Below are positions 5,300-46,131 of a stretch of 64,000 nt of DNA, in pieces. Origin of the DNA: Cyanophora paradoxa CCMP329 (lineage: Eukaryota > Plantae > Glaucophyta); contig QPMI01000483.1 in NCBI GenBank assembly GCA_004431415.1, forward strand, positions 248,001-312,000. The letters run 5' to 3'. The translations under genes were made by a program, and so were the position numbers. The notes beneath the pieces were generated by a model that made no database searches, was not told where the DNA came from, and saw nothing but the letters and a program-made list of their open reading frames with translations. The number at the start of each line of letters is the position of its first letter. The first letter of the stretch is position 1.

Positions 5300-5362
5300 A
5301 TGAGCCGGGCAGCTGTGCTCGCGGTCCTCCTTCTCATCGCTGTGGTGGGAGGGGCCGCGGCC
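5300..5362 (+). other. Signal peptide of the giant protein
   Basis: MSR, a hydrophobic core AAVLAVLLLIAVV, and a GAAA|Q cleavage-like site. Confidence 0.8.
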
Positions 5363-8300
5363 CAGCTGACCCCGGCAGCCGGTGAGCTGCTCTTGCGCTT
5401 TGTCTTTCCCATCGCTGACGATCGTGCACCGCGTCCCGTAGACTGCTGCTCCGGTAGCTGTCCGGCGGGAAAGTATTTCGCGAACTGTACAGCAGGAAGT
5501 GGAGGAGTATGTATAGATTGTCCGGCTGGAAGCTAGTGCGCTTCAATCGTTCTTTCTTGTTCCCTCTCGTTCGTTCTTGCTCCCGTCCGTGCATGACGCT
5601 CGATTCTATCCACGCAGTTGCCCAGTTGGCTCGACAACTTTCAAGCTCTGTCCGATTGGAACCTTTTTGAACACCACAGGACAGTCTGCATTGTCAGCAT
5701 GCGCGGTGAATTCACCTCTGCTCGCCTTCCCCCGTCTTGCTGCTCATTCGGAACCCGACAGGCGTGCCCAGCTGGCACTTACGCGACGGCCTCTGGCGCG
5801 ACGTCCTGCACGCCGTGCCCTGCAGGGTCTTTCTGCGCGGGCGCAACATCTTCGCCCGTCGTCTGCAATGCAGGTACGCCAGGTTCTCGCACGTATGCCC
5901 GCGTGCCGATCCTCGTTCTGCAGGGTATTACGCACAAGCCGGCAGCGGTGTTTGCACAGTATGCCCCACAGGCTCGTATAGCCTTGCGGGCTCCAGCTCG
6001 TGCACGAACTGCCCGGCTGGGCTGGTCCGCTTGTTCCCGCCTCGGCTTCTCGGCACCCTTTTGACGTCCTTTCACAGGCGTGTCCTCAACCGGATCAGGC
6101 ACCGATTGCGTGTGCACGGGGCACATTCAGCTTGGGATCCGCGTCGGACTGCACGCTCTGCCCTGCCGGTTTGCCTCGCTGTCCTGTGCTGCTCTCTGCC
6201 GTCGTGTTGAGGCGTGCTCGCAGGCTTTGCGTGCCCTTACACCTTCAATGCGACCATGATCTCCTGTGCGAACGGAACGTACTCCGTTCGCGGGCAGTCT
6301 GACTGCGCGATCTGCCCCGCTGGCTTCGAGTGTCCCAGCACGACCACTGCAATCCAGCGCGCATGCTCCGCCGGCACTTTTTCGACTGGCGGCCAGGTCA
6401 GTGTTGTGCCCTTGGTGGCGCTTCTCTCTTTTGACGCTTAAGTTTCTTTCCGCGCAGGGGGCTTGCACGTCGTGTCCGGCTGGTTACGCTTGCCCGCGCA
6501 CAGACGGGCTCGCCAACGCTCAGTGCCTTCTTGGATCTTTCTCGGAAGGGTGCGCTGTTCTTCCTGAACTTGCTGAGGTTTTTGCCTGACCAGGGGCTTC
6601 ACGTAGCGGCGCGACCATCTGTCAGACCTGCCCGGCGGGCTACGCGTGTCCCTCCACGAGTTCAGGACAGAAGATTGCGTGCAATCCGGGCACGTACTCT
6701 GTCGGCAACAGCTCTGTCTGCGTGAGCTGCCCACCCGGATTCTACTGCCCCGACACAACGAAGGCCATCGCCATCCCCTGCGCAACGGGCACCTTCTCGA
6801 TAGGCGGTCAGGCCGCTTGCACTCCATGCCCCGCCGGCCAGCGCTGCGATTCTGCTTTCAACGCCACCGGCGGTGTCTGCCCCGCCGGCACATACGCGCT
6901 CAGCGGCCAGGGCACTTGCGTTGCTTGTCCGGCGGGCTCGTATTGCCAGTCGTCATCGTGCGCGCTCCATCTTCCGTTACTCTGACGTCCGAAAGCTAAT
7001 TTACCCGCTTGTAACAGGACGGCGCCAGCGGCCTGCGCTGCTGGGTACTACAGCCTGGCCTCGGCGACCGCCTGCACGCCCTGTCCTGCCGGCTCGTACT
7101 GTGCCATCACCACTGCGGCTCCGGTCGCTTGTGTCGAGGGCAGCTACTGTCCGCCGATGAGGTCCGTTCTAGGCAGGGGCGCCTGCAATCGGCCGCGGAG
7201 CTCCTCTCACCGGAATTCGCGCGCAGCACGGCCCCCGTGAGCTGCCCGGTCGGCTTTTACAGCCTCAAGGGTTCCTCAAACTGCACGGCGTGCCCCGCTG
7301 GCTTCCAGTGCGCGAACCCGGCGGTGGCCCCCGTGGCGTGCCCGGCGGGCCAGTGGAGCCCTGGCGCGACGACCACGTGCTCGTCGTGCCAGCCCGGTTT
7401 CTACTGTACATCCGGATCCCCGTCCGCTACGCAGTACGCCTGCCCCACGGTAGGGCCGCCTCACTCTTCTTCCCCTTCGGCTCCTTGCGTTTAGGGCTGA
7501 GCGTCGATTCCAGGGCACGTTCTGTCTCGCGGGCTCGCCGTCTCCGTCCGCTTGCCCTCGGGGCTACGCCTGCGAAAGCACGTCGTCGGCACAGCTGACG
7601 ATTTGTCCGGCCGGCACGTTCTCGACAGGCAACCAGACGTCGTGCACCACTTGTCCAGCTGGCAGCGCGTGCCCGCTCCCCGACGGTTCCGCCAACGCGC
7701 TGTGCCCCCTCGGGACCTTCGCCCTTCCGTGCGGCACTTTTGGTGGCTTCGCACCTTTTTGATTCACTGAGCCCTGTCTCAGGGGTTCGACTGCGTGTCA
7801 GGCGTGCCCCGCAGGCTACGCCTGCCCGGACAGGACGAGCTCGGCGATGACGGCTTGCCAGGAGGGCTGGTACGCGAGCGCGAATCAGACCGTCTGCACA
7901 AAATGCCCGTCTGGCTTCGCCTGCCCCTACACTACAAGTGCGACGCAAAACCCGTGCTCCCCGGGGTCGTACTCTGCTGGTGGCCAGGTGCGACGAATTC
8001 TGTCTTCTCGTGCTCGCCTCCATTCCAACCGCCCGCAGGCCACCTGCACTCTCTGCCCCCCCGGCTCGTACTGCTCGTCGACCTCAGTGGCGGCCCCAGT
8101 TCTGTGTGCGGGCGGCTCGTATTCCCTTGGTGGGCAAACCGCTTGCACGCCGTGCCCTGCGGGCTACAGCTGCCTCGACGCACGGTTCGCTTTTTCGCCC
8201 ATTTTTTTAATTCGGAACGGCAAACCGACATACTTCCAGGAGCCCGCCCGTGAAGTGCGCTCCCGGTACATACAGCTTCTTTGCTGCGGCAGCAGGGAAC

Positions 8301-11300
8301 TGTTCCGTGTGTCCCGAGGGCTACGCTTGCCCAGACCCAGCGATTCAGCCGTCCATCTGTCCCGCTGGCACGTGGGCCCCCGCGGGCTCCACCGCCTGCC
8401 AGAAGTGCACACCTGGCTACACCTGCGCGTCCGCGGGATCCAGCACTGGCGCTCCCGGAACCGGCTCCTGCCCTCAGGGCAGCTACTGCCCCGAGGGCGC
8501 GACTGTGCCTGTTCCCTGCCCGGCCGGCACCTACGGCATCCGACCCGGCGCCACGAGCTTGGTGGACGGCTGCGGCACCTGCCCTCCACAAAAGTACTGC
8601 CCGCAAGGCACGGCGGATCCGTCGGCGTTTCCCTGCCCCCAGGGCTACTACTGCCCAGCGGCTACCACCTTCTCCACGCAGTACCCTTGCCCTGGCGGCA
8701 CGTACAACGATCAGGTGAACCGCACTTCTGACGCCGACTGTAAGCTTTGCCCGGCCGGCTCGTACTGCCCAACTGGTAGCGCGAACGCGAACAGCCTCTG
8801 TCCGGCTGGCTACTATTGCCCTGCTGGCACCGCCGATTACACTTCCCGTCCGTGTCCCGCTGGCACGTACAACTCGAACCCTCGCGCGACGGACAGCTCT
8901 GCGTGCCTTCTCTGCACACCTGGCCGGTACTGCCCGACCGCCAGCGTGCAGCCGACGCTTTGTCCAGCGGGAAGTTTCAACCCCGACGCTGGCGCGGGCT
9001 CGATCGTTAACTGCCGCGCCTGCTTTGCTGGCAAGGCCTGCCCAATCGCCGGCCTTGCCGCACCTCAGGTGGAGTGTGCGGTTGGCCACTACTGCCCGAC
9101 GGGTACCGTCACGTCAAACCAGTATCCATGTCTGCCCGGCACGTACACAGATCTTACGAATCTGACGAAGTCGGAGGACTGGTCCGCCTTTTCTCTATCG
9201 TCGTGTTCGCCTCCGTCGGCTCTGACGTGCCGGCCGCAGTTCGACTTGCCCTGAGCGACGGGCTTGTGACTGGGGCACTGGCGGGTCAGCGAATGTGCCC
9301 AAGCAATGCGCGCAGGGCCACTACTGTCCGGCGGGGACGGCGCTTCCGACTCAGTTCCCTTGCCTTCCCGGCACGTACACGAACCTGACGACCCTCGCCA
9401 CGCAAGACGAGTGCACGATTTGCGACGTCGGCACGTACTGCGTTGGCGGCCAGTCCAAGCCAACGGCTGCCTGCCCCATGGGCTACTATTGCCCCTTCGG
9501 CACGTCCCGCGCGGAGCAGTTCCCCTGCCCGAAGGGCACGTACAACGATGAGGTACTCTTTTCTTTACGCACTGCTGTTTCATGCTCGCGCCCTTACCTT
9601 GAGTATCGTGCAGCTTGGAGCGCAGCGTATCGATCAGTGCCAGCCGTGCCCAGCTGGCCGTTTCTGCCCTGAGGGAACGTCTTACCCAATTCCCTGCCCC
9701 TCTGGGAGCTACACCAGCGGGAACAGCACTGAGGCTGCTGCGACGACCAATTCGAGCACGTTCCCTCAGTGCACGACGTGCCCGGCCGGCAACTACTGCC
9801 CAACCGGCAGCCTTCTACCGGTCCCCTGCGGTCGCGGCATGTTCTCTGATGTTGGCGCGGGCTTCTGCTCAGTCTGCCAGGCCGGCCGCCACTGCTCCAG
9901 CAACACGACCTCCCTTCTGCAGATGCTCGAGAACGTCTGCGAGGCGGGCACGTACTGCCCGCCTGGCCAGGCCAAGGTTCCCGAGTTTACCAACGAACCT
10001 TGTTGGCGAGGATACTATTGCGATGCGGGGATACCGTACCCGACGAAGTGCCCGCCTGGAAGTTACAACCCCGTGCTCGGTGGCAACTCGTCGTCGGCCT
10101 GCCTCAGCTGTCCTCCTGGCTCCTATTGCCTCGAGGCGTCAGTCAACATCACTGGTCCTTGTGACCCTGGTTTCTTCTGTCCAGTCCGATCCTCGGGCCC
10201 GCAGCAAGTGCCCTGCCCCGGCCGCACGTACCGCAACCTGCCCGGTGCGGACAGCCAGGACGCCTGCGCCATCTGCCCCTCGGGGTACTACTGCCCAGTC
10301 GCGTCCTACAAGCCCCTCAACTGTACCGCCGGCTACTACTGCCCCGTCGGCACTGAAATCCCGGAGCCATGCCCCATCGGCACGTATGGCAATTCCACGG
10401 GCCTACGCGCGGTCGGTGACTGCACACTCTGCCCCGGCGGCTTCTACTGCGACGGTCTCGGCCAGACGTCGCCGCGCGCCCAATGCGGTGAGCGGTCAAC
10501 TCTCCCCGCGCTACGCCCTTCTCTGATGCGCGATTCGCACGCAGAGCCCGGTTACTACTGCACCCTAAGTGCGTACACTTCGGCGCCTCCGAATGGGCCG
10601 ACGGGTGGCATTTGCCCTGCCGGTTATTACTGTCCTGTTGGCACTACCAACCCGATTGCTTGGTGAGCTTTTGATTTATTCAATAGCTCGTTCTGTCCCT
10701 CACTGGCTCCACAGCAAACCTGGAACATACAACAATGTTACAGGCTGGAAGGCGGAGTGCCCAAGTTGCCCGCCGGGCAAGTACTGCCAAGGCTACAACA
10801 ACACATACCCGACGGGCGAATGTTTCGAGGGCTTTTACTGCACGGGCGGCGCAGAGTACGGCGACCAGTATGCAACTCAGCCCGGCTACTTTTCTTCGAA
10901 AGGTGCCTTCCAGCAGAACCCGTGCCAGCCTGGCACGTATCAGTACAACACGCGCATGAGCACGTGCTACACCTGCCCGCCGGGCTTCTACTGCCCCACG
11001 ACAGCGATGACGAACGCGACCAACTGCCCCAAAGGCGCTTACTGTACTGGTGGCACCGTCAACCCGCTTCTTTGCCCCCGCGGCACCGTCAACGATAAAG
11101 AGAGCGCTCAGAACTCATCCGCTTGCATTGACTGTCCGCCCGGCTCTTACTGCGCGACTGACGGTGCGCCACCTTTTTCATTCGTGTGCATTGCATTAAA
11201 TAGCAATCAAGTCTGATCGTTCTTCATCATTTTAAAGGTCTCGCGGCACCGACGGGACCTTGCGCGGCTGGGTACAAGTGTAAGCGGGAAGCAGCTGGCT

Positions 11301-14300
11301 TGAGCGGTGCTCGCGACCCCACTCCGTTAGCAACTTCTGGATACGGAGGTCCCTGCGATCCGGGCTACTACTGCGAGCTGGGAACCGGCGACCCCATTCC
11401 TTGCCCTCAGGGACAGTACTACGCCAACTTAGGTAACCCCGGCTCAAACGGAGTCAATGGGACGAAATGCCTGTTGTGCCCGCCCGGCTACTACTGCCCG
11501 GACCTGGCCATGAAAGACGGAAACGGTGCGTTTCTACGAGATTACCTAGATGTGCCCCTCGTCGTCGCTTATAACCTCGGCAGTGTACGAGTGCCCGCGC
11601 GGCTCCTACTGTCCCGAAGGCTCGACATATCCAACAGTTTGGTACGCCCAAGTTCAGCTTTCATCCCCCGCGCGGGTCTCACATGCGAGCGCAGCCCCGC
11701 TGGCACCATCCAAAACATCACGCGCGCCTCAGGCCTCGTGCAGTGTCTCAGCTGTCCGGCCGGCCAGTATTGCCCGGCCCCGAACCAGACTGCCCCGGCC
11801 GGCCCCTGCCAGGCAGGATTCTACTGTACTGGCGGAGCGGTTACTCCTCAGCAGAACGGCGTGCCCCCCGGCTATTACACGCTCGCGGGCGCCTCGCAGC
11901 CGGCGCCTTGCCCTCCGGGCTCGTACAACCCCAGCCCCAACCAGGCAAGCTGCACGCCGTGCACGGAAGGCAACTACTGCCCGGATCTGAACACCCCGTC
12001 CATGATTACGTGCACAGTCGGCCATTACTGCCCAGCGCAGAGCGTGCGGCCCATTCCTTGCCCCGCCGGCACCTACAGCGCTCGACCCGGTCTCGGCAAC
12101 ATCACCCAGTGCATCCAGTGCACGCCGGGCTACTATTGCGGCACCGTCGGCCTGACTACTGTTTCCGGCGGCTGTCTTCCCGGCTTCTACTGCGTCGGCG
12201 GCTCGCCTGCACCGAACCCTGTCGCCTTGTCGTGTGCGTACATGTCGTCGATTCGTTTTTCTTCATCCCACGCATGGCTCTGATCATGCGTTCTCGCAGC
12301 TGGCGGCCGTTGCCCTCGCGGATACTACTGCCCCGCCAACACGTCAGCCCCATTGTCCTGCCCGCTCGGGACTTACTTCCCTGGCGAGGGCAACATGGAC
12401 GTCTCTGGTTGCCTGCAATGCGCCCCGGGCTACTACTGCAGTGACGTCGCGCTCGCGGCTCCCATCGGGCGGTGCCCGGCCGGCCACTATTGTCCGCTCG
12501 GCACCTCCTACCCCGTTCCTTGCCCGAACGGCACGTACAACGCGCTCACCGGCGCGAGCGGCCTCGGCTCTTGTCTCTTGGCCCAGGGCGGCACGTACTC
12601 CGCTGGTGTTGGCAACACCCAAGTCACGGGCAACTGCTCGGCTGGCTACTACTGCCCCACTGGCTCCGTCTCCTCGACGCAGATCGACTGTCCGAAGGGC
12701 TCGTATTGCCCCCCGGCATCTGCGGCACCTATCTCCTGCGAGCCCGGCACCTACGCGCCGACGACAAGCCAAGCCACGTGTACAGTCTGTCCAGCAGGAA
12801 CATACTGTCCTGGAAGCAACACGGACACTCCGACTGATTGCACGGCTGGCAACTTCTGCCCCGCCAACAGCATTCAACCTTCGCCTTGGTATGCGCTTGA
12901 GCTGTCTTTTGTCCTAGAAAGTGTTTGAGTTTCCCCCTCCGCAGCCCGATAGGGACATATTCGAACTCTACGCGCCTACTGGCCGCGTCTTACTGCACAA
13001 ATTGCGAGCCGGGCATGTACTGCGACCGGCCCTCCCTGACCGCCCCCACCGGACCGTGCTTCCCTGGCTTCTACTGCTTCGGAGGAGCCACGACCGGCAA
13101 CCAAACGGATTGTCCGGCCGGCGGCTACTGTCCTGCGGGATCGACTCAGGCACAGCCGTGCCCGATGGGCACATTCCGTACCGGCATCCGCGGACAGTCT
13201 GAATCGGACTGCACGACGTGTACCGCCGGCAAGTACTGCAATGACACGGGCCTCAGGGCGCCCGCCGGTGACTGCATGCCTGGGTACTACTGCCCATCTG
13301 GATCGCGCACGCCAACGGCATGCCCTCCGGGCTCGTACAACCCGCAATCGTCGACGTCCGATATCAACAACTGCATGTCGTGTCCACCCGGAAAGTACTG
13401 CGCGGGCCCCGGCAACGCGAACTACACAGGCCTCTGCGCGGCGGGCTACTACTGTCCCGGCAACCAGACGACAGCGACGCCGGCGGACTTGCAGTGCCAG
13501 CCCGGCCAGTACTCGAATCCGGGCGCCTTCTCGTGCTCGATCTGCTCTTCTGGATTCTACAATCCGGCCCCGGCTCAGGGCGCCTGTCTGCCTTGCATCG
13601 CTGGGTTCTCTTGCCCTGCAGGGTGCGTTCTATATTGCTTCGTGCCATGTTCCCATTGTTTAACAGTTTGGCAGGAGCACGAACATCACTGCATGCCCGG
13701 CTGGTACATATTGCCCTGCGCAGGCGGCTTCACCGACGAAGTGCGACCCTGGCTACTATGGCACGACTGCAACAGCCACCAGCGTCTCTGAGGGCTGCAT
13801 GCGCTGCGATCTCGGCAAGTACTGCGCTGGCTCGGGCCTTACGGCACCCACCGGTGCTTGTCTCGAGGGGTACTACTGCCTTACTGGCTCGGACACTTCG
13901 ACGCCCCAGAACAGGACGGTCGACGCGCTCTTTGTCGGCGACAAGTGTCCAGCGGGCTACTATTGCACGAACGGGACCACGCAAATCCAGCCCTGCCCCG
14001 CCGGCACGTTCTCCAACGCAAGGGGTTTGATCAATGTGGAGGCCTGCACGCCCTGCACTGAAGGCTTCTACTGCAACAACCCCGGCCAGACGACCGTCAA
14101 CGCCACTTGCCCCGCTGGCCATTACTGCCCGACAGGCTCTTCCAACCCGCGTGCCTGCCCGGCCGGCACATACAACAACCTCACGCAGCAGGCCGCCCTT
14201 AGCAACTGCATTCCTGCGCCAGCTGGCAACTACATTGATTCCCCTGGCAGAACCACTCCGGGCCTGCCGTGCAACGTAGGGTATTACTGTCCGGCGGGCT

Positions 14301-35300: not shown

Positions 35301-38300
35301 CGGCGAAGAAGGCGGAGGCGGAGCTGCACGCGCAGAACGAGGCCGACAAGCTGGCGCTCAAGCAGAAGCAGGCGGCGGAGCTGCAGCAGGCCGAGGCCGA
35401 CTTCCAGATGGAGCTCGACGGCTCGCTGCAGTCGGCGGCGGCCGACGCGGACCGCGAGCTCGCGTGGAAGCGGCAGGAGCTCGAGCTCGCCAAGTCGGCG
35501 GAGCTCGCCAACGCGAAGACGGACGACGAGCGGGAGCGCATCCTGGCCAAGTACCGCGAGGAGCAGGCCAAGCTCGAGGCGGCGATGGAGCTCGAGAAGC
35601 AGCGGCAGGCGCAGCAGCTGCGCGACCGCCTCGCGGCCCGCAAGGCCAAGAAGATGGCCGACCTCAAGGCCGTCCAGGGCGCCGAGTCGAAGCTGAAGGA
35701 CTCGGAGGCGGCGGCGGCCGAGGCGGCGGCGCGCCTGGCGCGCGAGGCGGAGGCGGCCAAGGCCAAGGCGGAGCGGGAGCACGAGGCGCAGCTCATGGCG
35801 GTCGAGACGGAGCTCGAGAAGCAGGCGCGCGAGGAGGAGGCGCGCATCGCGGAGACGATCCGGGAGCGGGGCGAGGACGCCCTCGCGAACCGCAAGGCGC
35901 AGCTCGACGCCGAGCTCGCCGGCGCCAAGACCGACGAGGAGCGCGCCCGCATCCTGGCGCGCTACCAGGCCGACGCGGCGGCCCTGCAGGCGGCCCTCGA
36001 CCTGGACAAGGCCCGCCAGGAGCAGGCGCTCCGCGACAAGCTCGCCGCGCGCCGCGCCAAGAAGCTCGCCGACGAGAAGGGCCGGTTCGAGGGCGACCTC
36101 GACCGCGCGAAGGAGGCGGCGGAGCTGGCGGCCAAGGAGGCGGCGCTGCGGGCGCAGCAGGAGCAGGAGCGGCTGGCGGCGGAGCTGGCGCAGAAGCGCG
36201 ACCTCGCCTCGGCGGACGAGGCCATGCAGCGCGAGTACGAGGCCAAGCTGGCGAGCGCCGAGGCGGACGCGCGCGCGCGCCTCGAGGCGGAGGCGACGGA
36301 GCTGCGCCGCAAGCTGGAGATGGCCCTCGCCGGCGCCACGAGCGACGAGGAGAAGCGCCGCATCCTCGCCGAGTACGAGAAGCAGCAGGCCGGCCTGGCG
36401 CGCACCCTCGAGTCGGAGAAGGACCGCCAGAACCGCCTCCTGCAGGAGCGCCTCGCCAAGCGCAAGGCGGCCAAGATGGCCGAGCTCCAGGCGAAGCAGG
36501 CGGCCGAGGCGGAGGCGCTGCGGCAGCAGCAGGCGGCCGAGGCCAAGATCCTGCAGCAGGAGCGCGAGGCGGCGGCGAAGCTCGCCGAGCTCGAGAAGAA
36601 GCAGTCGCAGGAGCTGCAGCAGCTGCAGAAGAAGTCGGACGCGGAGGAGATCCAGCAGCTGACTGCCAAGATGCAGGAGCTCGACTCGGCGGAGGACGCG
36701 GCGCTGGCGCGGCTCGACGAGCAGCGCGACGCGGCGCTCGCGGCGGCGACCACCGACGCCGAGCGCGCGCGCATCCTGCGCCAGTACGAGGAGGACCGCG
36801 ACAACCTCCTCAAGTCCATGGACCTCGAGCGCCAGCGGCAGGAGCAGGCGCTGCGCGACAAGCTCGCCGCCCGCCGCGCCCGCCGCGTCGGCGACCTCAA
36901 GATGAAGCAGGGGGCCGACCTGGCCTCGGCGGACGCGCAGGAGCAGGGCCGCCTGGCGGCCCTCAAGGCCGACGTCGACCAGAAGGCGGAGCTGGCGGCG
37001 CTGCAGGCCCAGCAGAAGGCGGAGCTGGCGGCCATCGCGGCCGAGTTCGAGCAGGAGAAGGTCCGCCTCGCCGCCGACATGGAGGACGCGATGCGGCGCC
37101 GCGGCGACGAGGAGCGCGCCGCGCTCGCCAAGCTGCGCGCCGCCGAGCTGGCCGGCGCCTCGAGCGACGCCGAGCGCAAGGCGATCATGGACAAGTACGA
37201 GAAGGAGCAGCGGGCGCTCGACGCGGCGCTCGGCGCCGACCGCAAGCGCCAGGAGGAGGACCTGCAGGCCAAGCTGCTCGCCCGCAAGGCCAAGCGCGAG
37301 GCGGAGCTCAAGCGCAAGCAGGAGGAGGAGCGCGTGCTCAAGGAGAAGGAGCTCGCCCTCGAGAAGGCGTCGGCGGAGGCGGCGGCGGCGGCGGCCAAGG
37401 AGGCGGCGGCGGCGCAGCAGCGGCTGGTGACCGACATGGTCAAGGCGGAGGACGCGCTCGAGGCGGAGATGGCCGGGGAGGAGAAGCAGGCGATGGCGGC
37501 CCTCGACCAGCAGCGCGCCCAGGAGGAGGCCGAGCTCAAGCGCAAGCGCGACGCCGACCTCGCCAACGCCCGCAGCGACGAGGAGCGCGCCCGCATCCTC
37601 GCGCAGTACGAGCGCGACTCGTCGGCCCTCAAGCACGCCACGGACGCCGAGAAGCTGCGGCAGCAGTCGGCCCTGGCCCAGAAGCTGGCGGCCCGCCGCG
37701 CGGCCAAGGAGGCGGAGATGCAGAAGCGGCTCGAGGTGGAGCAGCGCAAGGCGTCGGCCGAGAAGGAGCAGGAGGCGATGGGGGCGCGCCTCAAGGCCGA
37801 GGCGGAGCTCGCCGAGGCCGTCCGCAAGCTCGAGCAGGAGAAGGAGCTCATGGAGCAGGCGGCCGCCGCCGAGCGCGAGGCGGAGGCGGCGGCCGCCGAG
37901 GCCTCGATCGCCGCCGGCGAGGCGCTCGCGCGCGAGAAGCGCGTCCTCGCTGAGAAGCTGACGGCCGAGCTCAACGCCGACCCGAACATGACGGCGACGG
38001 AGCGGGCGCGGATCCTGTCCAAGTACCAGGAGCAGGCGAGCGCCCTCGAGTCGGCGATGTCGGCGGACAAGGCGCGGCAGATGAACGACCTCCAGGCGAA
38101 GCTCGCGGCGCGCAAGGCGAAGCGCGAGGCGGAGCTCAAGGCCAAGCACGAGGCGGAGGCCAAGCTGAAGGCGGTGGAGGAGGAGGCGAAGCGGAAGGAG
38201 ATGGAGGTCAAGGCCGTGGCCGAGGCGCAGCTGGCGGACCTCAAGGGCAAGCAGATCGAGGAGCAGCTCAAGGCGGAGGAGGACCTCGAGGCGCAGATGT

Positions 38301-41300
38301 ACATGCAGATGGCCAAGGCCATGGCGGACATCGGCCGCAAGGAGAACGCGGAGCTCTCGGACCTGAAGAAGCGCCGCGACGCCGACCTCGCCAACGCGCA
38401 CACGGACGACGAGCGCAAGCGGATCATGGAGGCCTTCGAGCGGGACGCGGCCGGCCTGCGCACGGCGATGAGCATGGAGAAGGCGCGCCAGGAGGCCGAC
38501 CTCCAGCGGCGCCTCGCCGCCCGCCGCGGGCACCTCCACGAGGAGCTCGAGGCGAAGCACAACGCGGAGACGACCGCCAAGGAGGCGGACGCGGCGATCA
38601 AGGCGCAGGATGTCGCCGCGCGCGGCGCCCTCGAGGAGGCCAAGCTGCAGGCCGAGATCCAGCAGAAGGAGGCGCTCATGGCGCTCGAGCAGCAGCTCGA
38701 GCAGGAGCGCGCCGAGCGGGCGGCGGCGATCGAGCGGGCGGTGGCGGAGCAGCTGGCGGAGGAGAAGAAGCTGCTCGCGGCGATGATGGCGAAGGAGCTC
38801 TCGGCGAACCAGAACATGACGGAGGGCGAGCGGCAGAAGATCATGGCCCGCTACGAGGAGGAGGCCAAGAAGATGGAGGCGGCGCTCGGCTCCGAGAAGC
38901 AGCGGCAGGAGAGCGCCCTCCAGGCGCGCCTCGCCATGCGCAAGAAGAAGAAGGAGGAGCAGCTCAAGGCGGAGAAGGAGGCCGAGCTGAAGCGCAAGGC
39001 CGTCGAGGAGCAGCTCCGCCTGGAGGAGGCCCGCGCGGCCGCCGAGGCGGAGCGCGCGGCGGCGCAGATCAAGGTGCAGGAGGCGGCGGCGGTGGCGGCG
39101 ATCGAGCGCGAGGCCGAGGCGGCCGAGGCGGCGGAGATGGCCTCCATCGAGAGCGCGTTCGCGGCGAAGGAGCGGCAGGCGGAGGAGGACCTCGCCGTGC
39201 GCCGCGAGATGGAGCTCCGCGCCGCCAAGACGGACGAGGAGCGCGAGCGCATCCTCTCCCAGTACGAGACCGACCGCTCCGCGGCCCAGAAGCAGCTCGC
39301 CGTCGAGAAGCTCCGCCAGCAGCAGGAGCTGCAGGCCAAGCTCGCGGCGCGCACGGCGGCCCGCGAGAACGACGCCCGCCGCAAGCTCGAGGCGCAGCAG
39401 AAGGTCTCCGAGATCGATCGCAAGAAGAAGGAGGAGGAGGCGCGCATCCGGGCGCAGCACGAGCTGGAGCTGGCGGAGATGAAGCTCGAGCAGGAGCAGG
39501 AGAAGCGGGAGGCGGACGACGACCTCGAGAAGGAGGAGGAGCGGCGGCTCGCCGAGCTGGAGAAGCAGCGGCAGGCGGCGGCGGCGGAGAAGCGGCGGCA
39601 GATCCAGATGGAGGTCGAGCGCATGTCGAACCTCTCGGACGCGGAGCGGGCCAAGATCCTCGCCTCGTACGAGCGCGACCTGGCGGGCCTGCAGAGCTCG
39701 ATGCAGGCGGAGCAGCTGCGGCAGCAGGACGCCCTCCAGCGCCGCCTCGCGGAGCGCAAGACGAAGAAGGCGGCGGAGATGGCGCGCAAGCAGGCGGAGG
39801 AGATGGAGGCGAAGCGGGCCTCGCAGGCGGCCGAGGAGGAGGCGGCCCGCAAGAAGCTCGCCATCGAGCGCGAGGCGGCGCTCCTGGCGCTCCAGCACGA
39901 GCAGGAGCGGGCGCAGCTCAACGAGTCCATCGACAAGCAGAAGGACAGCGCCATCCAGCTCCTCGAGGAGCAGAAGAAGAAGATGATGACCGAGAAGCGC
40001 GAGGAGATGAAGCGGCAGCTCGCCTCGATGGGCACCATCACGCCGGAGCAGGCGGCGCAGATCATGCGCATGCACGAGGACGCGCTGACGGGCCTGGAGC
40101 GGACGCTGGAGCTGGAGAAGTCGAAGCAGGTTCAGAGCCTGAGCGACACGCTGGCGACGGAGAAGGCGCGCCTCGAGCAGGAGTTCGTCCGCAAGCAGGA
40201 GGCGGAGCTTCGCCAGAAGCAGCTCGAGCTCGAGAAGGCCGAGGCCGAGGAGCGCGCCCGCCTCGAGAGCGAGCGCATCAAGGCCGAGATGCTGCGCCAG
40301 CAGGAGGAGGAGCGGCAGGCCCTCGCCGCCGCCCTCGAGCGCGAGGCCGAGGCCAAGCTCGCTGAGGCCAAGGCCAAGGCGGAGGAGGAGGCGCGCGCCA
40401 AGCTGGCGGAGCAGCAGGCGAAGCTGCAGGAGGAGCTGCAGCGGCAGGACCTGACCGCGGAGGAGAAGTCGCGCATCTTCCAGGCGCACGAGGAGGAGGT
40501 GCAGAAGATGGCGGCGGCCCTCGTCTCGGAGCAGCGCCGCCAGGAGGGCGACCTCCAGGCCAAGCTCGCCGCCCGCAAGGCCAAGCGCGAGGCCGAGCTC
40601 AAGCGCAAGCAGGAGGAGGAGGCCAAGCGCATCTCCCTCGAGCAGCAGGAGCGCGAGTCGCAGCTCAGGCTGCAGGCGGAGGCGGCGACGGAGAAGGCGC
40701 GGCTGGAGGTGCAGCAGCTGGCGGAGAAGGCGCGGATGGAGCGGGAGCTGGCGGAGGCGATGCTCAAGGAGCAGCAGGAGCTCGCCCGCAAGCAGGCGGA
40801 GGAGCTCGCCCGCAAGGTCGACGACGCCGAGCGCGCCCTCGCCACCGAGGCCCGCCCCGCCCCGCCCCGCCCCGCCCCGCGCGCCCTCGCTCCGCGGCCG
40901 CCGCTGATCGCCTCGCGCGCAGAAACTCAAGACGGCCCAGCGCGCCGTGGCGGAGAAGTTCCGGAACATGCGGCAGAAGCTGGCGACGGACCAGAAGGTG
41001 AAGCACGAGGCCGAGACCGCCATCCGCGAGGAGGAGAAGCGCCGCCTCGAGGAGGAGGTCCGCCCGCCTCCGCGCCCGGGCCGGGGCCCCCGCTCACGGC
41101 GCGTGCGGCGTAGATGCGTGCGGAGATCGAGCGGCAGAAGGCCGAGGTCGAGCTCCGCCTCAAGCACGAGCTCGAGCGCCAGCGCGTCGAGCAGGAGATG
41201 GAGCGCGAGCACGAGAAGAAGGTGCGAAGCGGCCCCCGCGGGGCGCCTCGGGCGGGGGCGCCCGCCGCTGACGCCCGGCGCCGCGCAGCTGATCGAGCTC

Positions 41301-44300
41301 GAGCGGGAGCGGGCGCGGAAGCTGGAGGAGGAGAAGATGAAGATGGAGCGGGAGCTGAAGCTGAAGACGACGGACGAGGAGAAGCAGAAGATCATCCGCG
41401 ACCACGACGAGGCCGTCGCGCGCCTCATGGAGGCCATGCAGGAGGACAAGAGCCGCCAGGAGGGCGACCTCAAGCGCAAGCTCGAGGAGCGCAAGAAGAA
41501 GCGCGCCGCCCTGCAGGCCATCAAGGCCGACGAGGAGCGCAAGAAGCTGCAGGCGGAGGAGGAGACGCGCCGCGAGAAGGAGCGCATCGTCGCCTCGCTG
41601 CCCGTCCCCGCCGCCGTCCCCATCATCTCCACCCAGCGCGAGTCGCTCGCGCGCAAGGACTCGGCCTCGTCGTTCCGGCAGGCGCCAGTGCCGGCGACGC
41701 CGATGCAGCAGCGCGAGGCGGCCGGCATGGTGCCGCACGCGGCGCCCATCCCGATGCACCCCGAGCTCAAGAAGCTGCTCGAGGGCCCCGAGCTGGCGCG
41801 CCTCATCGGCCAGCTGCTCGCCAACGCCGGCGTCCTGCTCCAGGGCGCCGGCGCCTCGCCCATGTCGCACCTCGCCCCCGTCGACCCGCTCGACCTCTCG
41901 GCCGTCGGCGCCGGCTTCCGCGCGCCGAGCGTGCTGCTGACGCCGGTGCGGCGGGCGAGCCAGCTCTTCTCGGAGGAGGGGATGCCGTCGGCGCGCCTCG
42001 GCATGCCGCGCGCCGAGCTGCAGGGCCTCCACCAGAAGGAGACCTCGGAGCTGCGCGACAAGATCGCCAAGGCCGAGCAGCGCACGCTCACCGAGCTCCG
42101 CGGCCGCCTGGAGACGCACAAGCGGCAGGTCCTCGACGAGGCGGCGCGCGAGCACCGCGCCGCCGCCGCCGCCGCCGCCCGCTCCGGCTCCAAGGACGAG
42201 CAGGCGCGGCTGGCCGCCAAGCAGGCCGCCGAGATGAAGAAGGTCCAGGCGCTGCTGCAGGAGCTGCAGGAGCGCGAGGAGCGGGCCGTCGGCGAGAAGC
42301 TCAAGCGGCGCGCGGAGGCCAAGGCCAAGGAGATGAAGCGGCGGCACGAGCTGGAGCTGGAGCAGAACGCCCTCCGGGAGGAGGCGCAGCGGCTCCAGAA
42401 GGCGACCTCGGAGCAGCTGGCGACGGCGCAGGACCCGGTGCAGCGCCGCCGCATCGAGGACGACGAGGAGAAGAAGGTCATGGCGCTGCGGCGCAAGGAG
42501 GAGGACCTCGCGCAGGCGCTGCTGACGGTGGCGGTGGAGGCGGCCCCCGTGGAGGAGATGCCGGTGGGCGAGGCGCGGGCGCCGACGGCGGAGGAGATGG
42601 CGCTGCGGGCGGAGATCGAGCGGCTGCGCGAGGAGCTGGCGCGCACGCGCGAGGCGAGCTTCGCCAAGGTCGAGGACGACGTGCGGCGCGAGGAGGCCGA
42701 CGAGTCGCGCCTCATCGACGAGGCCCAGAAGGCCAAGAAGAACGCCCGCGAGACCGAGATCAAGTCCCGCATGGAGAGCGACCTCCAGGTCCGCCCCCGC
42801 CCCCTCCTCCCGCGCCCCGCGCCCCGCGCTGACGCGTCCCCGCGCGCGGCAGGCGAACCGGAACGAGAAGGAGAAGCAGAAGATCATGGACATGTACAAG
42901 CAGGAGCTGGAGGCGTCGGCGCGCACGCAGGAGCTGGAGAAGGCGCGGCAGCTCGAGGCCCTGCACCAGAAGCTCGAGGCGAAGAAGATGCGGCGCGTCG
43001 CCGAGCAGCAGAAGTCCGAGTCGGAGCGCGTGCAGCGCGCGATCAGCGCCAAGGAGCGCGAGCGGGAGCAGCTCGAGGTGAAGCGCGCCAAGGAGGCCGA
43101 GGCGCGCGCCATCAACGAGACGATCGCGTCCGCCAAGGACGAGACGGCGGCGGCGGAGGCGGTCGAGGGCATCCTCTACCGGCGCCACCAGTCGGAGAGT
43201 CAGGAGATGGCGGCGCGGCACGTGGCGGAGGTGGCCCGCGGCCTGCGCGAGGCGCTGGCGGCGCTGGAGGCGCAGCACGCGGAGGAGGCGGCGGCGCTGG
43301 TGGCGCGCCACGCGGAGGAGGTCGGGCGCGCCGACCGCGAGTCGGTGGACGCGGTGGTCGCGCGGCAGCAGCGCGAGCTGGACGAGCTGCGGCGGCGCCA
43401 CGGGGACCAGCTGCGCGTCACCGAGGAGAAGGCGGTGGCGAGCCTGCAGGCCAAGCACTCGCAGGAGGCCCTCGTCCTGCAGGAGCGCCAGCTGCGCGAG
43501 ATCGCCGACGCGTGCTTCGACGCGACGGCGCGCTCGGCGACGCAGCACCAGGCCGTGCTCCTGCGCGAGCGCGGCCTGCGCGCCCAGGCCATGGCCCGCG
43601 AGCTCGAGGAGTTCCGCGTCCGCCTCGAGAGCCAGACCATCGAGACCCAGAACGCGCGCCCGCCCCCGCCCCGCCCCGCCCCGCCCCGCCCCGCGCTGAC
43701 GGCCCGCGCAGCGGCTCAACGCGGAGAAGGAGCGGCTGCAGGAGGAGTACAAGAAGCGGCAGAAGGAGATGGAGACGGAGCTCGAGCGGGAGCGGGAGCA
43801 GCTGGAGCGGGAGCTCGACGAGCAGCGCGCCAAGCGGGCGCCGGCGGCCGGTGCGGCGGCCGGCGAGTCGGGCGAGCCGCTGGACGAGGCGGCGATGAAG
43901 GAGCGCATCCTGGAGGAGGGCCGCCGCGAGCAGCAGATGCTCGCCCAGCAGAAGGAGAGCGAGAAGGAGCGCCAGGCCCGCAAGCTCCGCGAGAAGCTCG
44001 AGGCGAAGAAGCGGGAGCAGCTGAGCAACCTCGACAACGCGATGCGGCAGTCGATGCACCGCCTGGACGAGGTGGAGAAGGACAAGCTCAAGGAGGTGGC
44101 CGAGCAGGCCAAGGCTGACGACGAGGTCAAGGCCCGCGTCGACGAGTCGGGCAAGACCGACTCCGCCAAGCTCAAGCGCATCGCCTCGGCCGTCATGCTC
44201 AAGCGGCGCGCCTCGATGAGCAGTTCCACGCTCGGCCCGCTCGTCGACGAGGCGAACGCGTCGGGCGCCCCGCCGCCGGTCTCGGCGGCGCAGTTCGCGC

Positions 44301-45300
44301 AGATGCTGGAGGCGAGCCCGCTGTACGCCAAGCTGCGGAACATCGAGGAGCTGCTGAGCAAGACGGCCCAGTTCGCGGCGGCGAGCCAGTCGGGCGAGGT
44401 CTTCCAGGACCCCGAGGACGCCAAGGTCGGCGACTTCGGCCAGCTCCAGCCCGTGCGCCCCCGGCCCCGCCCCCCGCCCCCCGCCCCCGCCCCCCGCGCG
44501 CGGCTGACCTCGCCCGCCTTTGCAGACGGACGTGAAGGAGCTGACGGCGAACGACGCGGCGTGCTACAACTTCGGCGCGTACGTCGCCGACGTGCTGGGC
44601 CGCAAGGAGGGCGCCCCCGCCGTCTCCCTCCTCCTCGCCAAGCGCCTCCCGACCAACAACTACCCGCGCAACGGTGCGCCGCGCCGCCTCCCCCCCGGCC
44701 CCACCCGGACCGCCGCTGACCCCTCGCCGGCGCAGCGTTCCGGAACAGCTTCTACTGGGACGAGCAGCAGCGGACGCTCTTCCTGCGGACGGACCGCCTG
44801 AAGAGCACGGGCGACTTCCTGCTGCTGCTGGTGCACACGATGGCGCACATCCGCACGGGCCAGATGGAGGACGACACGAACCCCGCCTTCCTCGCCGAGT
44901 TCTACTCCTCCCTCAAGAGTGCGTGCCCCGCCCCCGCGCGCCCCGCGGCGGCCCCCGCGGCCCCGCTGACGCCGGCGGCGCAGCGGTCTGCAACGAGCTG
45001 TACGTGGCGCACCAGGCGTCGCGGGGCGGGCGGCGGGGCGCGCCGTTCGCGTCGGGCTCGAAGCTGCTGTCGGACGCGGAGCGGGCGACGAAGGAGATCG
45101 TCGAGTCGCACCTCGCCGAGGGCGCCGCCCTCGAGTCCACCGTCCAGTCCGAGGTCCGCCCCCGCCCCGCCCGCCCCCCCAGAGGTCGGCCGCTCACCTC
45201 GGGCGCCGCAGGAGCTCCGCCAGAAGAAGGCGCTCGAGGCCCGCCTGCAGAGCCGCGCCGTCAAGCGCGGGCAGAGCCAGGCCGGCCCCGCGCCCCAGTA
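5300..45300 (+). CDS. Giant (~12,000 aa, estimated) type-I membrane protein: signal peptide, GCC2/GCC3 (ephrin-receptor-like) Cys-rich repeats, single TM, long helical-repeat cytoplasmic tail
   Basis: ATG at 5300 (MSRAAVLAVLLLIAVVGGAAA). About 45 short introns can be removed to give a continuous frame through CPAGxYC repeats, a TM helix (32282-32350) and an E/K/R/A-rich tail to TAG at 45298-45300. One 1-nt deletion at ~19726 breaks the frame in this assembly. Juxtamembrane (PNPTICL...YPKYEKDNLLNNNPDFDFSLFRQL) and C-terminal (LPTNNYPRNAFRNSFYW) motifs resemble, from memory, poorly characterised giant 'CAST multi-domain/GCC2-GCC3' proteins of other flagellated eukaryotes. Confidence 0.85.
17100..19987 (+). 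repeat. Coding tandem repeat array 1, 804-bp (268-aa) unit
   Basis: The same sequence recurs at 18294, 19098 and 19901 (the last offset is 803 because of the 1-nt deletion). The first copy (~17100-17940) is more diverged. Confidence 0.92.
21991..24978 (+). repeat. Coding tandem repeat array 2, 804-bp (268-aa) unit, near-identical copies
   Basis: The unit recurs at 22480, 23284, 24088 and 24892 with only a few SNPs, and is near-identical to array 1. Together the arrays form a ~5-kb higher-order duplication (19901 vs 24892). Confidence 0.93.
31431..31462 (+). repeat. Intronic C24-T8 homopolymer
   Basis: 24 C followed by 8 T, inside the intron at 31420-31504. Confidence 0.9.
32282..32350 (+). 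other. Transmembrane helix of the giant protein
   Basis: VIGGLLCACFLLVALLLGAIYYF followed by the basic segment GRKGWG...KPRYRR (positive-inside rule). Confidence 0.88.
33060..42980 (+). repeat. About 21 helical protein repeats of ~137 aa in the cytoplasmic tail
   Basis: The motif (A/N)x(T/S)DEER(A/E)RIL..YE.....L...LE.EK.RQ.Q.L..KLAARKAKK recurs with exact 411-nt spacing at 35099, 35510 and 35921, and similar spacing elsewhere. It is diverged at DNA level. Confidence 0.85.
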
Positions 45301-46131
45301 GGAGCTGCGGCACCCAGGACTCTCCGAGTGATTTCTCGTGAAGGAGAACCAAACCAAGAACCGTAGATAGGAACAATACTTGCTCCCAAGATTTTTTCGG
45401 GGGCGACAATCAAACCAATCCTGACAGCCATTTGGCTCATCCTGCAGACGTTGTTATGTTCTTCGTAGTGTAGCAACTCTTGTCACACACCTGTATAGAC
45501 TCAATTTGAACCAGAGCATCATGTCTTTCCCGTCGGCCTGCGCACAGACACAACCGCGCCCGTGTGGCCGCACCTTTGAATAAATACGAGAACAGTGCTA
45601 GACTCGCGACCCACCCTCCCACATCTCTCCGAGCCTCATGATCAGGCCTAGGGCCTCCGCGGCGGCCTGCAGCTGGCCATGAGCTCGGAGCAGAAATAAA
45701 TTGTGGTGATCTGAATTGAATTTCGGATTTTCCGAGTTCGTATTGCCAGGCTAGATAGCTGTGAAGGTGGTGAATCAGGGGTACAGGTGGACTGAGCAGA
45801 CAGGGGTACAGGGCTACAGGGACTTTGTGAAATAAACTTGGATCGTTGTTTTCAGAAAACTGGCTGGTCCAAACCAAACCAGCTTCGGGATGTCGAAGCT
45901 GAAGGCATCAATGGAGCTCCTGGCAAGAGCTGAGGCGTACGCCAACTCTCGGTTCTCGGCTACGGCTCAGCAATTGGGAGTCCATGATCATGATCATGAG
46001 GCGCATGCGCAAAGGTCTGCAACATCATGATCAGTCTAGGGCTGGCTCATCATGGCATGATTATCATCATAGTACTAGCAGACCGCACCCGGCCCTGTGC
46101 AAGTGCAGCAAGTGCGGGCCGCGCGCGGAGG

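What the first reader, a model, noticed from the sequence alone, without database searches (positions are those of the whole stretch)
5300..45300. One 40-kb gene encoding a ~12,000-aa single-pass receptor or tether
Seen: what the ORF track shows as dozens of fragments joins through ~45 short introns into one protein. It has a signal peptide, ~8,000 aa of Cys repeats densely studded with N-x-S/T sequons, a juxtamembrane domain, one TM and a ~4,000-aa helical tail. Established: GCC2/GCC3-type repeats occur in alveolate CRMP proteins that control secretory-organelle discharge and in algal surface proteins. Inference: a giant surface filament coupled to an intracellular rod, possibly a flagellar or cell-surface mechanosensor or an extrusome trigger. 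Automated pipelines would likely split it.
Basis: partly seen in the sequence, partly recalled or inferred. Interest (0 to 1): 0.8.

Follow-up and report, generated by a model that had tools for sequence, protein, structure and literature searches.

The report
Giant single-pass membrane tether gene
The 40-kb stretch is one real gene for a protein of about 12,000 amino acids that crosses the membrane once, and it belongs to an unnamed family of giant proteins found from protists to fish and mammals whose function nobody has studied.

Summary
A stop-free + strand model runs from ATG 5300 to TAG 45301, with about 44-47 exons and about 12,150 aa. It has a signal peptide and an 8,000-aa Cys-rich ectodomain with 772 Cys. 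The ectodomain has 162 N-x-S/T sequons against 68±7 in shuffles. There is one TM helix and a 4,100-aa tail.

Spliced RNA contigs from three studies join the ectodomain, TM and tail across 26.5 to about 34.9 kb. A DNA run keeps the introns. Three 7,000-7,500-aa proteins (two from Fabomonas and Chromosphaera, one unlabelled) are collinear with the window from 5.76 to 44.92 kb.

The juxtamembrane region finds 738 relatives, including jakobid, diplonemid, euglenid, metamonad, crinoid, fish, frog and mustelid proteins. None is characterised. Pfam names only the Ephrin_rec_like repeats.

Predicted folds:
- The juxtamembrane domain is cupredoxin-like, without copper ligands.
- The C-terminal domain is Wss1/SprT-like zincin, with HxxxH and no catalytic Glu.
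- The tail holds 18 tandem helical repeats of about 137 aa.

It is not a CRMP, which has nine TM helices. I read it as a structural transmembrane tether or spacer. That function is inferred, not shown. The organism (Cyanophora paradoxa) comes from an earlier scan note and was only partly checked.

The parts
5300..5362 (+). Start codon and signal peptide (aa 1-21, hydrophobic core, Ala-Ala-Ala before the likely cleavage site)
   Evidence: one of only two hydrophobic segments in the model (Kyte-Doolittle maximum 2.46). The upstream + strand gene (eIF3b-like) ends near 4.29 kb.
5300..31419 (+). Ectodomain exons: about 8,000 aa of Cys-rich Ephrin_rec_like (GCC2_GCC3-type) repeats with 772 Cys and 162 N-x-S/T sequons. 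About 35-40 exons. Intron borders before 26.5 kb are ab initio.
   Evidence: Pfam PF07699 scores 23-37 bits on several exons. tblastn hits of about 150 homologues cover 5.5-31.4 kb.
7225..11165 (+). Best-conserved distal (N-terminal) part of the ectodomain, 39-55% identical to the collinear Fabomonas, Chromosphaera and unlabelled (P0007) proteins
   Evidence: collinear high-scoring pairs, for example P0001 residues 1418-1744 against 9635-10660 at 52% identity.
17000..24900 (+). Recently expanded block: 804-bp (268-aa) tandem units that are 98-100% identical, and a duplication at 4,990-bp offset. Three units of about 5 kb (from 15.8, 20.8 and 25.8 kb) share intron positions.
26642..26697 (+). 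Intron, confirmed by RNA (56 nt)
   Evidence: the joint 26640>26697 is present in X1, X4 and X8 and absent from the DNA run X12.
29646..29697 (+). Intron, confirmed by RNA (52 nt)
29870..29931 (+). Intron, confirmed by RNA (62 nt)
31420..31504 (+). Intron (85 nt) that holds a C27/T8 homopolymer run. The RNA contigs fit it, but the joint itself is masked as a repeat.
   Evidence: The X1 and X4 records have exactly 3 letters between the pieces that end at 31416 and start at 31505.
31664..31718 (+). Intron, confirmed by RNA (55 nt). It joins the last ectodomain exon to the giant exon.
   Evidence: present in X1, X4 and X8.
31719..40849 (+). Giant exon (about 9.1 kb) encoding the juxtamembrane domain, TM helix and most of the tail. 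Its 3' end is either 40816 (GT donor) or 40849 (GC donor).
31850..32278 (+). Juxtamembrane cupredoxin-like domain with a conserved Cys pair and no copper ligands
   Evidence: 738 homologues, best E 6e-61; mean pLDDT 78, and 89-96 for the blocks covering residues 61-150; plastocyanin, E 3e-4, TM-score 0.62 by target length; pseudoazurin Z 9.0, plastocyanin Z 8.4; column conservation.
32279..32353 (+). The single transmembrane helix, preceded by a conserved Pro-Asp/Asn-Trp
32585..32728 (+). Conserved membrane-proximal cytosolic helix (about 48 residues), recognisable from this alga to the ferret protein
   Evidence: helix 289-336, pLDDT about 90.
33299..40681 (+). 18 tandem helical repeats of about 137 aa (period 134-140). 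Each has a short break before a TDEER-type motif. Pro plus Gly make up 1.7%.
40923..44452 (+). Distal tail: five exons holding further coiled coil and a less regular linker, weakly conserved with orthologues
   Evidence: P0001 residues 6057-7159 against 41301-44455.
44526..45153 (+). C-terminal globular domain in three exons (44526-44673, 44736-44918, 44984-45153): a zincin-like pseudo-protease
   Evidence: found in 63 homologues, always after the juxtamembrane domain and near the C-terminus. The protein-to-window matches change exon at intron 44674-44735, as in Fabomonas protein P0001, where residue 7206 maps before it and 7207 after it. Fold of orthologue P0001: Wss1 Z 9.2.
44837..44851 (+). 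His-x-x-x-His motif (His-Thr-Met-Ala-His) at the place of the zincin HExxH. The catalytic Glu is missing.
   Evidence: the first His is invariant, the second is at least 90% conserved, and none of the homologues shown in the alignment printed has Glu after the first His.
45212..45301 (+). Last exon and TAG stop (45299-45301)

Best explanation
Window 5300-45301 (+) is a single gene of a high-GC, intron-rich alga. An earlier scan note says the alga is Cyanophora paradoxa.

The gene encodes a type I membrane glycoprotein of about 12,150 aa. It is the longest member seen here of an unnamed, probably LECA-age family of giant proteins. The family's fixed core, from outside to inside, is:
- a copper-less cupredoxin-like juxtamembrane domain;
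- one TM helix;
- a conserved membrane-proximal helix;
- a helical rod of very variable length;
- a C-terminal zincin-like domain that has lost the catalytic Glu.

Most protist members, and this one, carry in front of that core thousands of residues of disulfide-knotted Ephrin_rec_like repeats.

How it most likely works (inferred, roughly 0.35 on its own): it is a passive structural tether or spacer. The glycosylated Cys-repeat filament projects from the cell surface, with a conserved distal part that could bind a partner. The helical tail reaches deep into the cortex. If it were one straight helix, about 3,700 residues would span up to about 0.5 µm. The pseudo-zincin end domain docks the tail on an intracellular partner. 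There is no sign of enzymatic signalling.
For: One gene:
- Spliced RNA contigs from three studies bridge 26.5 to about 34.9 kb, across the ectodomain, juxtamembrane domain, TM and tail. A DNA run keeps the introns.
- Three proteins of 7,076-7,499 aa are collinear from 5.76 to 44.92 kb. Two are labelled Fabomonas and Chromosphaera; the third (P0007) has no organism label.
- There are only two hydrophobic segments, the signal peptide and the TM.
- The coding score is far above that of the control strands and regions.
- The upstream gene ends at 4.29 kb.

Family:
- 738 hits at E<=1e-3 and 390 at E<=1e-10.
- Named members come from Fabomonas, Chromosphaera, Andalucia, Diplonema, Entosiphon, Kipferlia, Barthelona, Anneissia, Anguilla, Huso/Acipenser, Ascaphus, teleost si:dkey-103g5.4 and Mustela.
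- 63 proteins have both domains, always in the same order, with 150-3,900 aa between them.

Folds:
- Cupredoxin.
- Zincin.

Tail:
- 18 repeats of about 137 aa, with almost no Pro or Gly and amphipathic periodicity of 3.6-3.8.

No kinase, phosphatase, channel or other catalytic Pfam domain was found in the long open frames I scanned, which cover most of the gene from about 8.2 kb on.
Against: - RNA continuity was checked only for 26.5-34.9 kb. 5.3-26.5 kb and 35-45.3 kb rest on homology and an ab initio model.
- Internal promoters or alternative ends are not excluded.
- The 98-100% identical 804-bp repeats could be miscounted in the assembly.
- The C-terminal fold was predicted on the Fabomonas orthologue, not on this protein. 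Its three exons could not be joined for the tools.
- The tether function is architecture-based only. There is no localisation, no partner and no phenotype in any member.
- Fish and frog members have almost no ectodomain, so the extracellular filament is not essential to the family's core job.
- His-His-Asp might still bind a metal, so some chemistry cannot be ruled out.
Confidence: 0.85

Rival explanations
1. Two or more adjacent genes, or an assembly-inflated locus. For example, a secreted Cys-rich protein gene lies next to a separate membrane or coiled-coil gene, or the tandem units are an assembly artefact, so the 12,000-aa protein does not exist as such.
For: RNA was laid only on 26.5-32.5 kb. 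The ab initio chainer finds some stop-free path on control DNA too. The 804-bp units are 98-100% identical. No protein of this organism covering the region is in the libraries.
Against: The most likely split point, ectodomain against TM and tail, is bridged by single spliced contigs in two studies and by shorter ones in a third. Orthologues with the same end-to-end order exist in at least two other supergroups. An ectodomain without an anchor, or a TM protein without a signal peptide, would each be odd. The controls score 5-75 times lower.
Confidence: 0.07
2. A CRMP-like trigger of secretory-organelle (mucocyst or extrusome) discharge.
For: It shares the Ephrin_rec_like repeat type with CRMPs (PMC9815656 lists ERC domains). 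Cyanophora has mucocysts and alveoli (PMC6704402).
Against: CRMPs are defined by a nine-TM core with two EGF-like domains. This protein has one TM. The family occurs in vertebrates, a crinoid and many protists without extrusomes. CRMPs have no cupredoxin-like or zincin-like domain on record.
Confidence: 0.04
3. A flagellar or surface-coat protein. The ectodomain forms or anchors one of the two kinds of flagellar hairs, or a glycocalyx filament used for adhesion or gliding, and the tail runs along the axoneme or microtubular roots.
For: Cyanophora flagella carry two kinds of mastigonemes of unknown composition (PMC6704402). To my knowledge (not tested here), most of the named protist hosts are flagellates. 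The ectodomain is heavily glycosylated and Cys-rich, like known hair and surface proteins.
Against: There is no localisation or proteomic evidence. Fish and frog members have very short ectodomains. A 4,100-aa cytosolic rod is hard to fit between the flagellar membrane and the axoneme unless it lies lengthwise. This rival is a special case of the tether reading, not an alternative to the gene model.
Confidence: 0.15

Closest known systems
Unnamed giant orthologues: Fabomonas tropica EP00163_P011852 (7,499 aa), Chromosphaera perkinsii Nk52_evm8s371 (7,076 aa), Diplonema papillatum KAJ9462458.1, Andalucia godoyi ANDGO_08315, Kipferlia bialata GIQ81354.1, Barthelona KAL0230077.1
   Same: The order of parts is the same from end to end: Cys-repeat ectodomain, juxtamembrane domain (33-42% identity over roughly 200-330 aa), TM, conserved helix, helical tail with related repeats, and C-terminal HxxxH domain.
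   Different: This protein is about 1.6 times longer. It has extra near-identical 268-aa units in the ectodomain and 18 regular 137-aa tail repeats. The database names of the relatives ('Reticulocyte-binding protein 2 homolog a', 'Cytadherence high molecular weight protein 2') appear to come from coiled-coil similarity, not from function.
Animal members: teleost si:dkey-103g5.4, Ascaphus LOC142497073, Anneissia LOC117121631, Mustela 'SCO-spondin isoform X2' (XP_044928344.1)
   Same: They share the juxtamembrane cupredoxin-like domain, the TM and the membrane-proximal helix (BLASTP E 1e-21 to the ferret protein). The fish, frog and crinoid proteins also have the C-terminal domain.
   Different: Fish and frog proteins have almost no Cys-repeat ectodomain and tails of 700-1,500 aa. 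In the ferret protein I found Ephrin_rec_like repeats and the juxtamembrane domain but no C-terminal domain. Pfam finds only Ephrin_rec_like in it, so the name 'SCO-spondin' looks like a mislabel. That real SCO-spondin is a different, secreted protein is from my own knowledge, not tested here.
Apicomplexan and ciliate CRMPs (cysteine repeat modular proteins)
   Same: Large proteins with Ephrin-receptor-like Cys repeats outside the cell.
   Different: CRMPs have a nine-TM core plus two EGF-like domains and act in rhoptry discharge (PMC9815656, PMC9670195). This protein has one TM, a giant cytosolic rod, and different juxtamembrane and C-terminal domains.
Wss1/SprT (SPRTN) proteases and archaeal minigluzincins (selecase, jannalysin, abylysin)
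   Same: The predicted fold of the family's C-terminal domain: a helix, a three-stranded sheet, the active-site helix and a following helix. VIA-align gives Z 9.2 to Wss1 (rmsd 3.2 Å, 106 residues) and Z 8.3 to abylysin. Foldseek probability is 0.99.
   Different: HxxxH replaces HExxH in every homologue shown in the alignment. There is no sequence match to any Pfam or PDB entry. The domain sits at the end of a membrane-anchored rod, not in a DNA-repair protein.
Cupredoxins (plastocyanin, pseudoazurin)
   Same: The predicted fold of the juxtamembrane domain: pseudoazurin Z 9.0 (rmsd 2.6 Å, 96 residues), plastocyanin Z 8.4, Foldseek E 3e-4.
   Different: No His/Cys/His/Met copper site is conserved. 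Instead there is a conserved Cys pair (residues 63 and 150 of the query) and a Tyr-Pro-x-Tyr motif.

Membership tests
Unnamed pan-eukaryotic giant-protein family (juxtamembrane cupredoxin-like domain / TM / helical rod / C-terminal HxxxH domain) | Significant sequence homology of the juxtamembrane, TM and proximal-helix region | tested here: met
   best E 5.9e-61 at 42% identity, with 390 proteins at E<=1e-10.
Unnamed pan-eukaryotic giant-protein family (juxtamembrane cupredoxin-like domain / TM / helical rod / C-terminal HxxxH domain) | C-terminal HxxxH domain present, after the juxtamembrane domain and close to the C-terminus | tested here: met
   exons 44526-45153 match the C-terminal domain of about 50 homologues (up to 57% identity over 61 aa). 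About 80 aa follow the domain before the stop.
Unnamed pan-eukaryotic giant-protein family (juxtamembrane cupredoxin-like domain / TM / helical rod / C-terminal HxxxH domain) | End-to-end collinearity with full-length members | tested here: met
   chains of 18-22 high-scoring pairs from 5.76 to 44.92 kb with P0001, P0004 and P0007.
Pfam PF07699 Ephrin_rec_like (former GCC2_GCC3) repeat proteins | Score at or above the gathering cut-off of 23.1 bits | tested here: met
   37.2, 32.2, 26.5, 24.4 and 23.1 bits on separate exons. The repeats are divergent, and most copies fall below the cut-off.
CRMP (cysteine repeat modular proteins) | Conserved core of nine transmembrane helices with two EGF-like domains (PMC9815656) | tested here: not met
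   only one internal hydrophobic segment. No EGF hit in Pfam.
Zincin metallopeptidases (Wss1/SprT, minigluzincins) | Zincin fold | tested here: met
   on the Fabomonas orthologue's domain (pLDDT 89), not on this protein's spliced domain.
Zincin metallopeptidases (Wss1/SprT, minigluzincins) | HExxH with the catalytic Glu | tested here: not met
   His-Thr-Met-Ala-His here. None of the homologues shown in the printed alignment has Glu at that place.
Zincin metallopeptidases (Wss1/SprT, minigluzincins) | Third metal ligand and bound zinc | not testable with these tools
   A nearly invariant Asp lies 9 residues after the second His. Whether it binds a metal needs experiment.
Type 1 copper cupredoxins | Cupredoxin beta-sandwich fold | tested here: met
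Type 1 copper cupredoxins | His, Cys, His, Met copper ligands | tested here: not met
   no conserved Cys or His in the C-terminal loop. The two conserved Cys lie at residues 63 and 150 and more likely form a disulfide.
Flagellar membrane or hair glycoproteins (FMG-1B, mastigoneme proteins) | Sequence homology or flagellar localisation | not tested

The most novel reading that the evidence does not exclude
This is the largest known member of a protein family that dates back to the last eukaryotic common ancestor and has never been named. The family acts as a transmembrane 'ruler'. A cupredoxin-like domain sits on the outer face. A helical rod, whose length evolves freely from 150 to about 3,900 aa, sets the distance between the plasma membrane and a cortical or cytoskeletal structure. 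A dead zincin domain has been re-used as the docking module. In protists the same protein also builds a surface filament hundreds of nanometres long.
Probability: 0.3. Interest if true: 0.8.

Novelty: new variant of a known kind. Interest (0 to 1): 0.68.

Why it matters
If the model is right, this is one of the largest proteins of any alga. It also gives a clean, RNA-supported entry point to a family present in at least four eukaryotic supergroups and in vertebrates.

In everything I could search, that family has no name and no paper. Its two core domains have no Pfam family, and no relative has a solved structure.

The report gives the family a testable anatomy: a copper-less cupredoxin, one TM, a rod of variable length and a Glu-less zincin. 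It also points to tractable organisms for a first functional test, zebrafish (si:dkey-103g5.4) and Diplonema papillatum. Finally, it corrects misleading database names such as 'SCO-spondin' and 'reticulocyte-binding protein'.

Tried and rejected
- Tandem Repeats Finder found nothing because the periods (804 bp, 411 bp) are near or above its limit or the copies too diverged. I measured the repeats by script instead.
- Adding splice-site weight matrices to the exon chainer over-predicted tiny exons and was dropped. No parameter set recovered all five RNA-confirmed introns; the best got four of five. So intron borders before 26.5 kb are approximate.
- The word-indexed protein search found only 2 hits with the single sequence and 1 hit with the profile. 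The exhaustive HMMER search was needed. The third word search was not spent.
- Pfam found nothing for the tail, the juxtamembrane domain or the C-terminal domain, in this protein or in orthologues.
- PDB sequence searches with both profiles found nothing meaningful.
- Atlas feature searches gave only unnamed clusters.
- Literature searches for the family, for gene and locus identifiers of six members, and for the zebrafish gene name returned nothing relevant.
- Earlier scan notes hold nothing on this gene.
- CRMP membership was rejected.
- I considered that the C-rich tail introns might be copies of one mobile 'introner'. The alignment shows only low-complexity (CCCCG)n similarity.
- No complex prediction was run, because no specific binding pair is claimed.

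Full report
**What is there**

The window is GC-rich (0.60-0.74 across the locus). On the + strand, dozens of open frames with 6-12% Cys run from 5.2 to 31.6 kb. They are followed by a 3,244-codon open frame with almost no Cys (31379-41110) and further open frames to 45.3 kb.

The big frame reads as follows:
- a beta-rich domain;
- one hydrophobic helix;
- a short conserved stretch;
- about 2,800 residues rich in Ala, Glu, Leu, Arg, Lys and Gln.

The last frames encode more coiled coil and a globular-looking end.

**Gene model**

I wrote a dynamic-programming exon chainer. It scores codon log-odds, requires GT-AG introns and forbids in-frame stops, including in split codons.

From ATG 5300 to TAG 45301 it gives one continuous model:
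- 41-47 exons and 11,737-12,231 aa, depending on the parameters;
- a complete path even when every intron is capped at 130 nt;
- 12,150 aa in the curated version.

A stop-free path can also be forced through control DNA, but at far lower quality. The forward strand scores 9,757 with 52 introns. The reverse strand of the same span scores 1,994 with 185 introns. A neighbouring 10 kb scores 129. So path existence alone is no evidence, but the score and the intron count are.

The joined translation was used only inside scripts, for counting. All searches used single exons by reference, or database proteins.

**Counts**

- Signal peptide: aa 1-21.
- Ectodomain: 8,024 aa with 772 Cys. The commonest Cys spacings are 6, 3, 12, 10 and 17. 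There are about 180-210 C-P-x-G-x-Y-type motifs.
- Sequons: 162 N-x-S/T against 67.9±6.9 in shuffles.
- The only other hydrophobic segment is the TM helix at aa 8,025-8,049.
- Tail: about 4,100 aa.

**RNA**

Seventeen runs of the same organism hold the stretch. I laid X1, X4, X8 and X12 on 26500-32499.

- X12 is unspliced, so it is DNA.
- X1 (an 8,163-nt contig), X4 (8,611 nt) and X8 come from three studies. They skip 26641/2-26696/7, 29646-29697, 29870-29931 and 31664-31718, all GT..AG.
- They leave exactly three letters between 31416 and 31505. That fits intron 31420-31504, whose C/T homopolymer run is masked.
- The X1 and X4 contigs continue about 2.45 kb beyond 32499.

So the Cys-rich ectodomain, the juxtamembrane domain, the TM and the first 850 or so residues of the tail lie on one spliced RNA contig.

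Two of my ab initio introns in this tile had a wrong border. That sets the error rate to expect elsewhere.

**Relatives**

An exhaustive HMMER search used the 356 residues around the membrane (31721-32788). It found 738 proteins at E<=1e-3 and 390 at E<=1e-10. Many are giants of 4,000-7,800 aa.

Names, where any exist, place them as follows:
- Fabomonas (ancyromonad);
- Chromosphaera (ichthyosporean);
- Andalucia (jakobid);
- Diplonema and Entosiphon (euglenozoans);
- Kipferlia and Barthelona (metamonads);
- a crinoid;
- eel, sturgeon and teleosts (si:dkey-103g5.4);
- a frog;
- mustelids (mislabelled 'SCO-spondin').

None carries a functional name that means anything.

Three full-length proteins are collinear with the window from 5.76 to 44.92 kb:
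- The distal ectodomain at 7.2-11.2 kb is the best-conserved part, at 39-55% identity.
- The middle aligns as generic repeats, at about 30%.
- The membrane-proximal 29.7-31.4 kb, the juxtamembrane region, parts of the tail and the C-terminal domain follow in order.

Sixty-three homologues have both the juxtamembrane and the C-terminal domain. The order is always the same. The C-terminal domain lies within 0-340 aa of the end. Between the two domains lie 150-3,900 aa.

This independent evidence covers the parts of the gene that I could not check with RNA.

**Domains**

Pfam recognises only PF07699 (Ephrin_rec_like, the former GCC2_GCC3). The scores sit at or just above its cut-off on several exons. 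Pfam finds nothing in the tail, the juxtamembrane domain or the C-terminal domain, here or in orthologues. PDB sequence searches are empty.

Juxtamembrane domain:
- AlphaFold2 was run on a 42-sequence alignment (A1). Mean pLDDT is 78, and 89-96 for the blocks covering residues 61-150 of the beta domain.
- Its best structural matches are all cupredoxins. Plastocyanin gives E 3e-4 and TM-score 0.62. Pseudoazurin gives Z 9.0 and plastocyanin Z 8.4.
- The copper ligands are not conserved. A Cys pair and a Tyr-Pro-x-Tyr motif are.

C-terminal domain:
- It was modelled on the Fabomonas orthologue, because this protein's domain is split over three exons. pLDDT is 89.
- It has a zincin fold. Wss1 gives Z 9.2 and abylysin Z 8.3. 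Selecase, jannalysin, SPRTN, M48 and M78 also match.
- The motif is His-x-x-x-His with an invariant first His. None of the homologues shown in the alignment has Glu after it.
- I read this as a pseudo-protease, with possible residual metal binding through a conserved Asp.

**Tail**

A profile built from the tail itself finds 18 consecutive repeats with a period of 134-140 aa. They contain almost no Pro or Gly. Their hydrophobic periodicity is 3.6-3.8 residues. Similar repeats, with other periods and copy numbers, occur in the tails of many homologues, though compositional bias may inflate that count.

**Context**

- The upstream + strand gene is eIF3b-like and ends near 4.29 kb.
- The organism name, Cyanophora paradoxa, comes from an earlier agent's note.
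- I checked only that the window's GC content and intron sizes of about 50-85 nt fit the published genome. The paper reports 67.6% GC and a mean intron of 86 bp (PMC6704402).
- That paper also describes alveoli, mucocysts and two kinds of flagellar hairs. I use these only as background for the rivals.

**Interpretation**

Shown:
- It is one gene, at least across the critical junction.
- The architecture is as described.
- It belongs to an uncharacterised family spread across eukaryotes.
- It is not a CRMP, whose core has nine TM helices (PMC9815656).

Inferred:
- The protein is a passive transmembrane tether or spacer.
- No catalytic or signalling domain was found in the open frames I scanned.
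- Both long parts are built like rods.
- The rod length is the most variable feature of the family.
- The conserved parts are the two ends of the cytosolic rod, the domain just outside the membrane and, in protists, the distal ectodomain.

Where the protein sits and what it binds is unknown.

**Limits**

- Only one 6-kb tile could be laid with reads.
- Both fold jobs went to the two unnamed domains.
- Taxon labels were obtained for about 30 of the 738 hits.
- The repeat copy number at 17-25 kb depends on the assembly.
- At 40.8 kb two in-frame donors are possible, GT at 40817 or GC at 40850.

Noticed in passing
window 31637-42772 (- strand): A 3,711-codon open frame lies antisense to the coiled-coil exon. 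The sense strand is purine-rich (AT skew up to 0.5), so its reverse complement has no stops. It is most likely a by-product of composition. It bears on the 'bidirectional ORFs' reported for this genome (PMC6704402).
   Followed up: partly
window 17000-24900: The 804-bp tandem units are 98-100% identical, and a duplication at 4,990-bp offset is 100% identical over 18.2-19.7 kb against 23.2-24.7 kb. This is either a very recent in-gene expansion or a possible assembly miscount. Of three 5-kb units, the third lacks the first intron that the other two share.
   Followed up: partly
window 31420-31504: This intron contains a run of about 27 C followed by 8 T. Both RNA and DNA short-read contigs break or are masked there.
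   Followed up: no
window 40817-40922: There are two in-frame donor choices for one acceptor: GT at 40817, or GC at 40850 followed by the C-rich sequence typical of the neighbouring introns. This is either a possible GC-AG intron or alternative donors that differ by 11 codons.
   Followed up: partly
window 40850-45211 (tail introns): The eight or nine introns of the tail are (CCCCG)n-rich and end with a CTGAC-type branch site and GCAG. They resemble each other by composition only, not as copies of one element.
   Followed up: yes
window 1882-4289 (+): The upstream neighbour is eIF3 subunit b-like (RRM_1 plus eIF2A domains) and ends about 1 kb before the giant gene's ATG.
   Followed up: partly
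window 50000-55000: This stretch has 73-81% GC and 640-aa open frames on both strands (50590-52524 + and 50624-52573 -). Neither has a Pfam match.
   Followed up: no
P0155 (Mustela putorius furo XP_044928344.1) and cluster members: The mustelid proteins labelled 'SCO-spondin' belong to this family. They have Ephrin_rec_like repeats, the cupredoxin-like juxtamembrane domain and one TM. One 218-aa cluster member is labelled PTPN18 isoform X2, which hints at a neighbouring-gene fusion in that annotation.
   Followed up: partly
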